From contig NIVC01000013.1 in assembly GCA_002269645.1 (NCBI GenBank), forward strand, positions 1,302,001 through 1,366,000: a stretch of DNA of 64,000 bases, read 5' to 3'. This document shows, in pieces, positions 9,402 through 10,387 of this stretch. Source of the DNA: Macrostomum lignano (lineage: Eukaryota). The notes under the pieces are model-generated. The model was not told where the DNA came from. It made no database searches and saw only the letters and a program-made list of their open reading frames with translations. The first letter of the stretch is position 1. Each line of letters starts with the position of its first letter. A program made the translations under genes and the position numbers.

Positions 9402-10387
9402 ATGGCGGACCTCTACGAGTGTCTTGGAGTGCAGCTGTGGGCGTCTGCGGCACAGATTCGGAAAGCGTTCTACGGTCGAGCACGCGAACTGCACCCTGAC
9501 AAGAGCGCAACAGAGGAGACGCGAAGAGATTCCAGGAGTGCGAAGAGGCGTACCGAATACTGTCGTGTCCGTTCCTTAGAAAGCTGTACGATATCTTTGG
9601 AAATGCTGTTCGTGACCGGGATGAGATGCTTCGGCTCGCAGAAGGGATGTTAGAGGATGAAGACATGCCCGACGATCTCCGAGAAGAGATAGAAAGACTA
9701 CAAGAGAGCGACCGATTAGCTGAGGAGGCGTACGAGAGAGAACAGGCGAGGAGGGATGAGGAGCACGTCAAGATGGAGGCAAGTGAGGAGGCCTCAGACG
9801 ATGAGCAGGACGAAGAGATGAACGAGGCGAGTGAGACACTGCCGGAGGAGTACGAGGTCGAGAAGGTCTTAGGAGTACGAGTCACGGAGCGAGGAGCGGA
9901 GTATCTGCTGCAGTGGGCCGGTGTAGAGGAGCTTGAGACGTCATGGGAAGCGGAGGAAGATTGTGCCGGATGTAGAAACCTGATTGAAGAATATCTGCAG
10001 AGAGCGTACCGGCTTCAGACAAGACCGTGCCGACCAGTGACCGTCGCGGAACTGGAGAACGTAGGACCCAGTCGGAAGAAACTGCACCAGGCAATGCGGA
10101 AGGGCGACCCGTGGGGCATCTTTGAGGTGCTGCTAGCCCTGAAGGGGAAGTGCGCCACTGCCTTGGTGGATTTCAAGGAATTCGGTCCGGAGTTGATGCT
10201 GCAAATCCTGGGCTACTTGGAGCGAGACGGTCGCAAGTATCCGGGGCACGGAGTTCGTCGGTGGAGTCGCCAAGCGTGTCAAGCTGTCTACATGTCGGTG
10301 ATGGTGGTGTTCCCGCTGTTCGACCTGCGACGCCAGGGTTTGGTCCTGGGTGCCCTCCGTAGGCTGTGGGATTCGTGCTCTGACTGA
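9402..10387 (+). CDS. Accessory ORF3 of the Gypsy element: DnaJ J-domain, acidic linker, chromodomain and unknown C-terminal domain (one 1-bp deletion near 9519)
   Basis: MADLYECLGVQLWASAAQIRKAFYGRARELHPDK (helices I-II plus HPD), then in the -1 frame AKRFQECEEAYRILSCPFLRKLYDIFG (helices III-IV), continuous with ORF 9626-10387 containing EYEVEKVLGVRVTERGAEYLLQWAGVEELETSWEAEEDCAGCRNLIEEY (chromodomain). Confidence 0.88.

What the first reader, a model, noticed from the sequence alone, without database searches (positions are those of the whole stretch)
9402..10387. LTR retrotransposon carrying a DnaJ J-domain plus chromodomain accessory protein in the env slot
Seen: an intronless ORF starts 100 bp after the pol stop and lies before the PPT and 3' LTR, so it is inside the element. 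After one 1-bp correction (~9519) it encodes a complete J-domain (LYECLGV...IRKAF...LHPDK...KRFQECEEAYRILS...RKLYDIFG, HPD intact), an acidic linker, a chromodomain and a ~120-aa tail. Established: J-domains with HPD recruit and stimulate Hsp70; the polyomavirus T-antigen J-domain uses Hsc70 to dismantle Rb-E2F complexes; DNAJC9 links Hsp70 to histones; chromoviruses fuse a chromodomain to integrase to guide insertion. Here the chromodomain is in a separate ORF and joined to a co-chaperone domain, an architecture I do not know from described Gypsy elements. Inference: the protein may target Hsp70 to methylated chromatin, acting as an anti-silencing factor (stripping HP1/Polycomb/Piwi complexes), a trans-acting integration tether, or a VLP assembly/uncoating chaperone. 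Two of the three HP1 aromatic-cage residues are present (Y in EYEV, W in QWAG); the third is Val, so the ligand may differ.
Basis: partly seen in the sequence, partly recalled or inferred. Interest (0 to 1): 0.93.

Follow-up and report, generated by a model that had tools for sequence, protein, structure and literature searches.

The report
Retrotransposon-encoded J-domain chromodomain accessory protein
A young flatworm (Macrostomum lignano) Ty3/gypsy retrotransposon carries, where other elements carry an envelope gene, a conserved gene for an Hsp70 co-chaperone (J-domain) joined to an HP1-like chromodomain. It belongs to a small, undescribed clade of elements that all encode such J-domain proteins.

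Summary
Window 3144-11798 is a complete LTR retrotransposon of Macrostomum lignano, with LTRs 99.6% identical. ORF3 (9402-10387) lies 99 nt after the pol stop and before the PPT. It encodes a J-domain with an intact HPD, an acidic linker, an HP1-class chromodomain with two of three cage aromatics, and a helical tail with no known family. The window copy has one frameshift. Natural intact copies of 328 and 326 aa exist elsewhere in the genome.

ORF3 is under purifying selection (dN/dS 0.17 against a 76%-identical relative) and has the base composition of pol. Three further element lineages also place a J-domain ORF directly after integrase; a fourth contig shows the same order but holds only part of pol. 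Their pol proteins are 51-57% identical to this one. They share the J signature and the tail, but carry an acidic, SIM-like motif instead of the chromodomain. The four lineages with full pol form one pol clade (200/200). The sister elements checked have no ORF3. All ORF3 start codons follow a splice-acceptor-like AG.

The most likely function is an element-encoded adaptor that brings host Hsp70 to marked chromatin, for counter-silencing or for integration. That function is inferred, not shown. I found no description of such a gene in the literature.

The parts
3140..3143 (+). Target-site duplication, 5' copy (GATA)
   Evidence: The same 4 bases lie at 11799-11802. Copies L001 and L004 also show 4-bp duplications (GCTT, CTTA) when the LTR is taken to end in ...CACA. 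The match extends to AAGATA if the LTR end is set 2 bp earlier.
3144..3978 (+). 5' LTR, with TG...CA ends
   Evidence: blastn of the window against itself: 3144-3976 matches 10962-11796 at 99.64% over 835 columns, with 2 gap columns. Sequence read.
3982..3999 (+). Candidate primer-binding site, starting with TGG 3 nt after the LTR
   Evidence: Assigned from position and the TGG start only. No tRNA gene in the window to compare it with. Untested.
4087..5162 (+). gag (CCHC zinc knuckle, N-terminal Ala/Gly repeat). Broken in this copy by 1 frameshift, no stops.
   Evidence: Pfam zf-CCHC, PNMA and Retrotrans_gag hits. It matches residues 28-366 of the 366-aa gag of copy L001 at 100% in one frame, while the ATG lies in another frame.
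5096..9302 (+). pol: protease (about 5306-5584), RT (6313-6798), RNase H (6988-7389), integrase zinc (7759-7932), integrase core (7975-8268) and integrase C-terminal domain (8703-8807). 2 frame changes and no stops. One frame change is shared by all four copies of the family. The other is private to this copy.
   Evidence: Pfam hits. Frame-change counts against the single-ORF pol of related families. Sizes of open stretches per copy. No Chromo hit anywhere in pol.
9303..9401 (+). 99-nt spacer with two further in-frame stops. It ends in a pyrimidine-rich ...ttacag acceptor-like motif (9396-9401) directly before the ATG.
   Evidence: An AG acceptor-like motif lies 0-2 nt before the ORF3 ATG in all five lineages compared.
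9402..10387 (+). ORF3, the accessory gene. Broken in this copy by 1 frameshift, no stops. Natural intact copies are 328 aa.
   Evidence: Intact in L001, P0273 and L003.
9408..9592 (+). J-domain, with HPD and the family signature ILSCPF.R..YD
   Evidence: Pfam DnaJ 59.1 bits over profile 1-63 in the intact copy. The modelled J-domain superposes on solved J-domains with TM 0.82-0.89 and rmsd about 1 A.
9593..9850 (+). Acidic linker, predicted to be one long helix
   Evidence: Translation. Helix 91-131 in the model. This is the least constrained part (dN/dS 0.30).
9851..10003 (+). HP1-class chromodomain (cage Y and W kept, third position Val)
   Evidence: Pfam Chromo E 6.2e-13 over profile 1-53 of 53. 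Best solved relatives are Swi6, CBX5, CBX1, HP1 and Rhino, E 2e-10 to 1e-7, with residue alignments.
10004..10384 (+). C-terminal tail, a family-specific five-helix domain from about 10061
   Evidence: Conserved across the J-ORF3 lineages. Model pLDDT about 75 with five helices. No Pfam, PDB-sequence or Foldseek match.
10388..10949 (+). Non-coding stretch between ORF3 and the PPT. Its second half (10631-10949) is AT-rich (34% GC).
   Evidence: Composition. Present in all four copies. No similarity elsewhere in the window or in related elements.
10950..10961 (+). Polypurine tract (AGGGGACGGGAG)
   Evidence: Read directly; it abuts the 3' LTR.
10962..11798 (+). 3' LTR
11799..11802 (+). Target-site duplication, 3' copy (GATA)

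Best explanation
ORF3 is a genuine, selectively maintained accessory gene of a small clade of flatworm Ty3/gypsy LTR retrotransposons.

Shown here:
- It sits between integrase and the PPT in every copy and lineage examined.
- It encodes a stand-alone (class C) J-domain with HPD, an acidic helical linker, an HP1-like chromodomain and a clade-specific five-helix tail.
- It evolves under purifying selection and has the composition of the element rather than of a host gene.

Inferred:
1. The J-domain docks on host Hsp70 and triggers its ATPase. This is the established role of J-domains with an HPD.
2. The middle module is an address. In this family it is a chromodomain, which would read methyl-lysine or a related mark. 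In sister families it is an acidic SIM-like motif, which would read SUMO.
3. The protein therefore brings Hsp70 remodelling activity to proteins bound on marked, repressive chromatin. The most likely purpose is to loosen silencing complexes on element copies (counter-silencing).
4. The conserved tail binds the actual client.
5. The gene is expressed from a spliced or SL trans-spliced subgenomic RNA, using the AG acceptor that precedes the ATG.
For: - Domains: Pfam DnaJ and Chromo above cut-off in the intact copy P0001 and split over two frames in the window. The modelled J-domain matches solved J-domains with TM 0.82-0.89. The chromodomain is closest to the H3K9me readers Swi6, CBX5, CBX1 and HP1.
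- Gene reality: four full-length copies 98-99.3% identical all carry ORF3. It is intact in L001, L003 and P0273. dN/dS is 0.17 overall, with J 0.13, chromodomain 0.14, tail 0.14 and linker 0.30, at dS 0.81 and Fisher p 1e-24. GC and GC3 of ORF3 are 0.57 and 0.65, against 0.555 and 0.64 for pol and 0.49 and 0.52 for a host ORF.
- Clade: L005 (M. lignano), L006 and L007 (JGI sample 3300040801) and L008 (Logan SRR31628392) have a J-domain ORF directly after integrase, with the same J signature and tail. The four lineages with full pol are monophyletic, 200/200. Outgroups L009 and L010 have the 3' LTR right after pol and no J-domain.
- Address module swaps: the chromodomain is present only in the window family and P0002. 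The others have hydrophobic-x-hydrophobic-S-D/S-D/E acidic motifs at that place.
- Expression route: an AG acceptor-like motif lies 0-2 nt before the ATG in all five lineages, although the upstream sequences cannot otherwise be aligned. In M. lignano 39% of genes are SL trans-spliced and about 7% of transcripts are polycistronic precursors (PMC5730564). The transcript-based annotation calls ORF3 as a gene of its own.
- From general knowledge, not tested here: J-domain-only proteins act by placing Hsp70 at a site or client. SUMO and H3K9 methylation co-mark silenced transposon chromatin in animals.
Against: - No functional, expression or localisation data were available, so Hsp70 stimulation and chromatin binding are untested.
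- The aromatic cage is incomplete (Val at the third position), so the ligand may not be a methyl-lysine.
- The chromodomain could not be modelled (pLDDT about 30).
- SIM-like motifs are short and common in acidic linkers, so that reading is weak.
- The chromodomain is absent from most lineages, so chromatin reading may not be the core function.
- On the pol tree, gain and loss of the chromodomain are equally parsimonious.
- The flanks of the four copies show no clear insertion bias: one lies in another LTR element, one in tandem repeats, two are unremarkable, and the genome is more than 50% repeats.
- The genomic context of P0002, the partner in the dN/dS comparison, is unknown.
Confidence: 0.4

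Rival explanations
1. Trans-acting integration tether and remodeller. The tail binds the element's integrase or pre-integration complex. The chromodomain (or the SIM-like motif) anchors it to marked chromatin, as the integrase-fused chromodomain does in chromoviruses. The J-domain brings Hsp70 to remodel or release the integration complex.
For: The gene lies directly after integrase in every lineage. In one M. lignano gene model (P0126) the integrase C-terminus and a J-domain are read in one frame. The tail is conserved together with pol across the clade. One copy is nested in another LTR element and one lies in tandem repeats. Chromoviral targeting by an integrase chromodomain is established knowledge.
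Against: There is no evidence of a contact between tail and integrase. With four insertion sites in a genome that is more than 50% repeats, no bias can be read (PMC5730564). A tether does not obviously need a J-domain. The aromatic cage is incomplete.
Confidence: 0.25
2. Cytoplasmic particle chaperone. The J-domain recruits Hsp70 to fold, assemble or uncoat Gag/VLPs. The chromodomain and the acidic motifs are only protein-protein interaction modules with no link to chromatin.
For: The conserved core is the J-domain plus the tail, not the chromodomain. Hsp70/Hsp40 involvement in the assembly and uncoating of viruses and virus-like particles is established knowledge. No nuclear signal was shown here.
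Against: The chromodomain is of the HP1 class, is under selection as strong as on the J-domain (dN/dS 0.14), and keeps the residues that align with histone-tail-binding positions in solved HP1-class chromodomains, apart from one cage residue. Nothing links the tail to Gag.
Confidence: 0.15
3. Passenger. ORF3 is a transduced fragment of host genes that is carried along and does nothing for the element.
For: The J-domain and the HP1-like chromodomain are cellular domain types. An unrelated J+chromodomain protein (P0220) shows that such fusions arise independently. The window copy is frameshifted.
Against: It is retained at the same place in a monophyletic clade whose pol proteins have diverged to 51-57% identity to this one. 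It is under purifying selection in every domain. Its composition equals pol's. The acceptor motif is conserved. The HPD is invariant in all six aligned members. No host gene with this architecture was found among 1.84 billion representatives.
Confidence: 0.05

Closest known systems
Chromoviruses (Ty3/gypsy elements with a chromodomain at the integrase C-terminus)
   Same: A Ty3/gypsy LTR retrotransposon that encodes a chromodomain downstream of the integrase core.
   Different: Here the chromodomain is not part of pol. It lies in a separate ORF after three in-frame stops, counting pol's own, behind a J-domain. It is of the cellular HP1 class. pol and its relatives carry no Chromo domain.
Env-bearing Ty3/gypsy elements (errantiviruses and similar), where ORF3 lies between pol and the 3' LTR
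   Same: A third ORF in the same slot, with an acceptor-like motif suggesting a subgenomic spliced mRNA.
   Different: The product is a soluble J-domain/chromodomain protein, not an envelope-type protein. Pfam finds only the DnaJ and Chromo domains.
Polyomavirus large and small T antigens (a virus-encoded J-domain)
   Same: A mobile genetic parasite that encodes its own J-domain with HPD to use host Hsc70 on host nuclear complexes (general knowledge).
   Different: There is no sequence relation beyond the J-domain fold. The partner domains differ, and this is a retroelement, not a DNA virus. This is an analogy only.
Cellular class C J-domain proteins that act on chromatin (DNAJC2/ZRF1, DNAJC9; plant PKL-associated JDPs, bioRxiv 10.64898/2026.09.14.751395)
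   Same: A J-domain joined to a module that reads or binds chromatin, placing Hsp70 at chromatin (general knowledge; listed).
   Different: Their chromatin modules differ (SANT/ubiquitin-binding, histone-binding). None is encoded by a transposon. No homology outside the J-domain was seen.
Transposon-encoded anti-silencing factors (for example VANC of Arabidopsis VANDAL elements)
   Same: The proposed logic: an accessory protein of the element that counteracts host silencing of its own family (general knowledge).
   Different: Unrelated protein, DNA transposon, different mechanism. For ORF3 this function is only inferred.
P0220, an uncharacterised 263-aa J + HP1-like chromodomain protein from an ENA assembly
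   Same: The same two Pfam domains in the same order.
   Different: Its J-domain lacks the ILSCP signature and its best solved J-domain relatives were not examined. It has no tail and no known link to a transposon. It is an independent fusion.

Membership tests
Ty3/gypsy (Metaviridae) LTR retrotransposon | Two LTRs with TG...CA ends, target-site duplication, PBS after the 5' LTR and PPT before the 3' LTR | tested here: met
   LTRs are 99.64% identical. TG..CA ends, a 4-bp duplication (GATA) and the PPT were read directly. The PBS is only a candidate.
Ty3/gypsy (Metaviridae) LTR retrotransposon | gag with a CCHC knuckle, and pol in the order protease, RT, RNase H, integrase | tested here: met
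   Pfam hits in that order. The closest proteins are Ty3/gypsy pol proteins.
J-domain protein, class C (J-domain only) | J-domain of about 65 aa matching PF00226 above the gathering score | tested here: met
   59.1 bits against a cut-off of 27.8 over profile 1-63 in the intact copy P0001. In the window it is split over two frames: 35.3 bits (positions 1-37) and 17.8 bits (positions 36-63).
J-domain protein, class C (J-domain only) | HPD tripeptide between helices II and III | tested here: met
   HPD is present in the window and invariant in all six aligned family members.
J-domain protein, class C (J-domain only) | J-domain fold | tested here: met
   The AF2 model has pLDDT about 80 over residues 1-60. 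Foldseek TM is 0.82-0.89 and rmsd 0.9-1.9 A to the Ydj1, DnaJ and Tid1 J-domains.
J-domain protein, class C (J-domain only) | No G/F region, zinc-finger or DnaJ C-terminal domains (these would make it class A or B) | tested here: met
   Pfam and NCBIfam match the J-domain only. Full-length DnaJ models score far below their cut-offs.
J-domain protein, class C (J-domain only) | Stimulates the ATPase of an Hsp70 partner | not testable with these tools
   Inferred from the HPD and overall conservation only.
HP1-class chromodomain (methyl-lysine reader) | Chromodomain matching PF00385 above the gathering score | tested here: met
   48.9 bits against a cut-off of 25.1 over profile 1-53 of 53. Best solved relatives are Swi6, CBX5, CBX1 and HP1.
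HP1-class chromodomain (methyl-lysine reader) | Complete three-residue aromatic cage | tested here: not met
   Alignment to CBX5, CBX1 and Swi6: Y and W are kept, and the third cage position (F/Y in the solved proteins) is Val.
HP1-class chromodomain (methyl-lysine reader) | Binds methylated histone tails | not testable with these tools
   The chromodomain part of both models had pLDDT about 30, so even the geometry could not be judged.
HP1 family protein | Chromodomain plus C-terminal chromoshadow domain | tested here: not met
   No chromoshadow hit. The C-terminus is an unrelated helical tail.
Chromovirus | Chromodomain fused to the C-terminus of integrase within pol | tested here: not met
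   pol ends with an Integrase_p58_C domain and an acidic tail and carries no Chromo domain. Three in-frame stops, counting pol's own, separate it from ORF3. None of the 120 closest pol proteins carries PF00385.
Env-type ORF3 of errantivirus-like elements | ORF3 encodes an envelope or fusion glycoprotein | tested here: not met
   ORF3 carries only DnaJ and Chromo domains. Signal peptide and transmembrane segments were not tested with a dedicated tool.
J-ORF3 clade (proposed here) | ORF directly after integrase with J signature ILSCP[FY].R..YD, an acidic linker and the conserved helical tail (GRR.W ... F.LR..G..L..L) | tested here: met
   Window family, L005, L006/P0154, L007 and L008/P0152. The pol clade has 200/200 support.

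The most novel reading that the evidence does not exclude
A clade of LTR retrotransposons has evolved its own Hsp70 co-chaperone. Its interchangeable address modules are an HP1-like chromodomain or SUMO-interacting motifs. They direct host Hsp70 to heterochromatin and silencing complexes and dismantle them. This would be the first retrotransposon-encoded, chaperone-based counter-defence against transcriptional silencing.
Probability: 0.25. Interest if true: 0.9.

Novelty: new variant of a known kind. Interest (0 to 1): 0.72.

Why it matters
Accessory genes of LTR retrotransposons are few (env, some plant antisense or extra ORFs), and they show how elements deal with their hosts. I know of no earlier case of a retroelement encoding a J-domain protein. 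It parallels the J-domain of polyomavirus T antigens, but here it is joined to a chromatin-reader module.

If the inferred function holds, it would make it possible to test how transposons escape or exploit heterochromatin. It would do so in an animal with transgenesis, RNAi and a germline that regenerates from somatic stem cells. LTR retrotransposons make up 21% of the M. lignano genome, and some families already exploit the heat-shock pathway (PMC12801592).

The proteins sit in GenBank and UniProt as 'hypothetical' or 'J domain-containing' proteins with no link to a transposon. The finding therefore also corrects annotation.

Tried and rejected
- **Tail profile search.** I searched the large protein collection with a profile of the tail alone. 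It returned nothing, not even the query's own protein, so the result is uninformative rather than negative.
- **Metagenome and viral scans.** Two scans of JGI metagenome contigs and one of viral contigs with family alignments found no confirmed locus. The JGI contigs that do carry the family were reached only through exact protein look-up.
- **Structure models.** The second, from five sequences, gave a usable J-domain and tail but no chromodomain. Foldseek against the PDB matched only J-domains. The tail profile against PDB sequences hit only designed helical bundles at E above 0.05.
- **Heat-shock link.** M. lignano LTR elements are known to carry heat-shock elements (PMC12801592). This element has no canonical three-unit heat-shock element, even with one mismatch. 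The link was dropped.
- **Read-through extension of pol.** Rejected: three in-frame stops.
- **Chromovirus origin of the chromodomain.** Not supported: the closest relatives are cellular HP1/CBX proteins, and no chromodomain is found in related pol proteins.
- **Clade assignment.** Assignment to a named GyDB clade (Mag, CsRN1, Gmr1/Osvaldo, Mdg3) could not be made, because no reference set was available.
- **Frameshift repair.** The natural intact copy P0001 was used for all full-length analyses.
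Full report
[quoted passage not shown] The ORF3 piece is 100% identical to GenBank PAA78660.1 (BOX15_Mlig001265g11) of assembly GCA_002269645.1. Positions 3144-11798 are a complete LTR retrotransposon. Its two LTRs of about 835 bp are 99.64% identical and have TG...CA ends. A 4-bp target duplication (GATA) flanks it. A candidate PBS lies 3 nt after the 5' LTR, and a polypurine tract (10950-10961) abuts the 3' LTR. Inside are gag (CCHC knuckle), then pol in the order protease, RT, RNase H, integrase, then ORF3. The element is inserted into another gypsy-like element.

**The observation.** It is confirmed in every detail.
- pol stops at 9302. Two more in-frame stops follow, and ORF3 begins at 9402, 99 nt later. 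It ends at 10387, 562 nt before the PPT.
- I searched the two frame pieces as they stand. The first matches the N-terminal half of Pfam DnaJ (E 1.2e-8). The second matches the C-terminal half (E 3.6e-3) and the whole Chromo profile (E 6.2e-13).
- ORF3 has one frame change and no stop.
A natural uninterrupted copy of 328 aa (P0001) is available and was used for all full-length work. It scores DnaJ 59.1 bits and Chromo 47.7 bits.
- The modelled J-domain superposes on solved J-domains (TM 0.82-0.89).
- The chromodomain's best solved relatives are the H3K9me readers Swi6, CBX5, CBX1, HP1 and Rhino.
- The last 125 aa or so match no Pfam family and no PDB sequence or fold. They are predicted as five helices at moderate confidence.

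**State of the window copy.** All breaks are frameshifts and none is a stop. gag has 1. pol has 2, one of which is shared by all four copies of the family. ORF3 has 1. The window copy and copy L001 differ at about 58 alignment columns, and 43 of these are gap columns. The assembly examined is PacBio-based, and only 64% of its bases are error-free by REAPR (PMC5730564). The private frameshifts may therefore be assembly errors. This cannot be settled here.

**ORF3 is a real gene of the element.** Four full-length copies at different loci (window, L001, L003, L004) are 98-99.3% identical, and all have ORF3 in the same place.
- ORF3 is intact in L001 and in a fifth locus (P0273, 328 aa).
- It is intact with an in-frame 2-aa deletion in L003 (326 aa).
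- It is broken by two frameshifts in L004.

A relative 76% identical at the protein level comes from a Logan assembly (P0002, SRR24204725). Against it, dN/dS is 0.17 at dS 0.81, with J-domain 0.13, chromodomain 0.14, tail 0.14 and linker 0.30. The excess of synonymous change has Fisher p about 1e-24. The GC and GC3 of ORF3 equal those of pol and differ from a host ORF in the same window. This argues against a recent capture.

**The gene defines a clade, and the chromodomain is its variable part.** A second M. lignano family (L005, pol 57% identical) places a J-domain ORF directly after integrase. So do two 7-kb contigs of JGI sample 3300040801 (L006 and L007, pol 51-52%) and a Logan contig (L008, SRR31628392). 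A third M. lignano lineage (P0126) shows the same association.

All members share an unusual J-domain signature (ILSCP[FY].R..YD), an invariant HPD and the C-terminal tail. None of these other lineages has a chromodomain. At that place in the linker they carry hydrophobic-x-hydrophobic-Ser-Asp/Ser-acidic motifs such as ILISDSD and ITISDSD. These have the form of SUMO-interacting motifs. That reading is an inference from a short motif.

In a neighbour-joining tree of pol, the four J-ORF3 lineages with full pol form one clade in 200 of 200 bootstraps. The two sister elements I checked (L009, L010) have their 3' LTR within about 100-200 nt of the pol stop and no J-domain. The J-domain ORF was therefore acquired once. 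Whether the chromodomain was gained in the window's lineage or lost in its sister cannot be decided from this tree.

A full HMMER scan of 1.84 billion representative proteins found only about five clusters of this family. It also found one unrelated J+chromodomain protein (P0220).

**Expression route (inferred).** The upstream sequences of the five lineages cannot be aligned. Even so, each ORF3 ATG is preceded within 0-2 nt by a pyrimidine-rich AG acceptor-like motif. My rough estimate of the chance expectation is below 1e-4. M. lignano trans-splices 39% of its genes and has polycistronic precursors (PMC5730564). Its transcript-based annotation calls ORF3 as a separate gene in the copy whose pol ORF is longer. 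This fits a spliced or SL trans-spliced subgenomic mRNA, but I could not examine reads.

**Mechanism.**
- Established: a J-domain with an HPD docks on Hsp70 and triggers its ATPase, and J-domain-only proteins work by placing Hsp70 at a site or client.
- Shown here: such a J-domain is joined to an HP1-class chromodomain and a conserved private domain, all under selection.
- Inferred: the middle module is an address (methyl-lysine-like mark or SUMO) and the tail holds the client.

I commit to a chromatin-addressed Hsp70 adaptor whose most likely use is counter-silencing (0.40). The rivals are an integration tether and remodeller (0.25), a cytoplasmic particle chaperone (0.15) and a passenger (0.05). 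Three points weaken the chromatin reading: the incomplete cage, the absence of the chromodomain from most lineages, and the lack of any expression or localisation data.

**Comparison with known systems.**
- The element is a Ty3/gypsy retrotransposon by every structural test.
- It is not a chromovirus, because the defining integrase-fused chromodomain was tested and is absent.
- ORF3 occupies the env slot but is not an env.
- The product is a class C J-domain protein by sequence and fold.
- It contains an HP1-class chromodomain but is not an HP1 protein, since it has no chromoshadow domain.
- Functionally, the nearest analogues are the polyomavirus T-antigen J-domain, chromatin-acting cellular J-proteins and transposon anti-silencing factors. 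All of these are analogies.

**Novelty.** Four full-text searches found no description of a J-domain gene in an LTR retrotransposon. The two M. lignano LTR-element papers I read do not mention it. Repbase and GyDB could not be checked. I rate it a new variant of a known kind: an LTR retrotransposon with a new class of accessory gene.

Noticed in passing
window 2363-3143 and 11807-11974: The element is nested in another gypsy-like retroelement. The flanks on both sides match Ty3/gypsy pol proteins, and an upstream ORF (1745-2389) has an aspartyl protease hit.
   Followed up: partly
window 5096-9302; L001, L003, L004: All four copies of the family need one frame change between protease and RT. 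Related families (L005, L006, L007, L009, L010) have one continuous pol ORF. This is either a programmed frameshift or a defect shared by young, near-identical copies.
   Followed up: partly
window 10631-10949: An AT-rich stretch (34% GC against about 55-64% around it) lies between ORF3 and the PPT. It is kept in all four copies and has no similarity elsewhere in the window or in related elements.
   Followed up: partly
window 4087-4200; L001 4661-4790: gag starts with an Ala/Gly tandem repeat, (AAGG)n in the protein. In the window copy gag aligns with L001's gag only after this repeat, and the window's gag frameshift lies within it.
   Followed up: partly
window vs L001 (whole element): About three quarters of the differences between copies are single-base indels (43 gap columns of about 58 differences). 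This is typical of long-read consensus errors, so the frameshifts may not be biological.
   Followed up: no
L003 12953-13933: This copy's ORF3 is open but has an in-frame 2-aa deletion inside the chromodomain.
   Followed up: no
window 1-224, 14743-16900, 17119-17887, 18824-19698: Several long tandem-repeat arrays with periods of 32, 18, 39, 28 and 23 nt. This fits the report that tandem and simple repeats make up 15% of this genome. Similar arrays flank copy L001 and follow ORF3 in L005.
   Followed up: no
window 44630-48760 (+): An intronless ORF of 1376 aa encodes a long coiled-coil protein (Pfam Filament 2e-22 and many other coiled-coil families). It is probably a host gene.
   Followed up: no
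P0220 (ENA contig, 263 aa): An unrelated protein with a J-domain lacking the ILSCP signature, followed by an HP1-like chromodomain. This is an independent fusion of the same two domains, from an unknown organism and context.
   Followed up: partly
L005 7195-7453: In the second M. lignano family the ORF3 reading frame runs on into a 20-nt tandem-repeat array. The true end of that ORF3 is therefore unclear in this copy.
   Followed up: no
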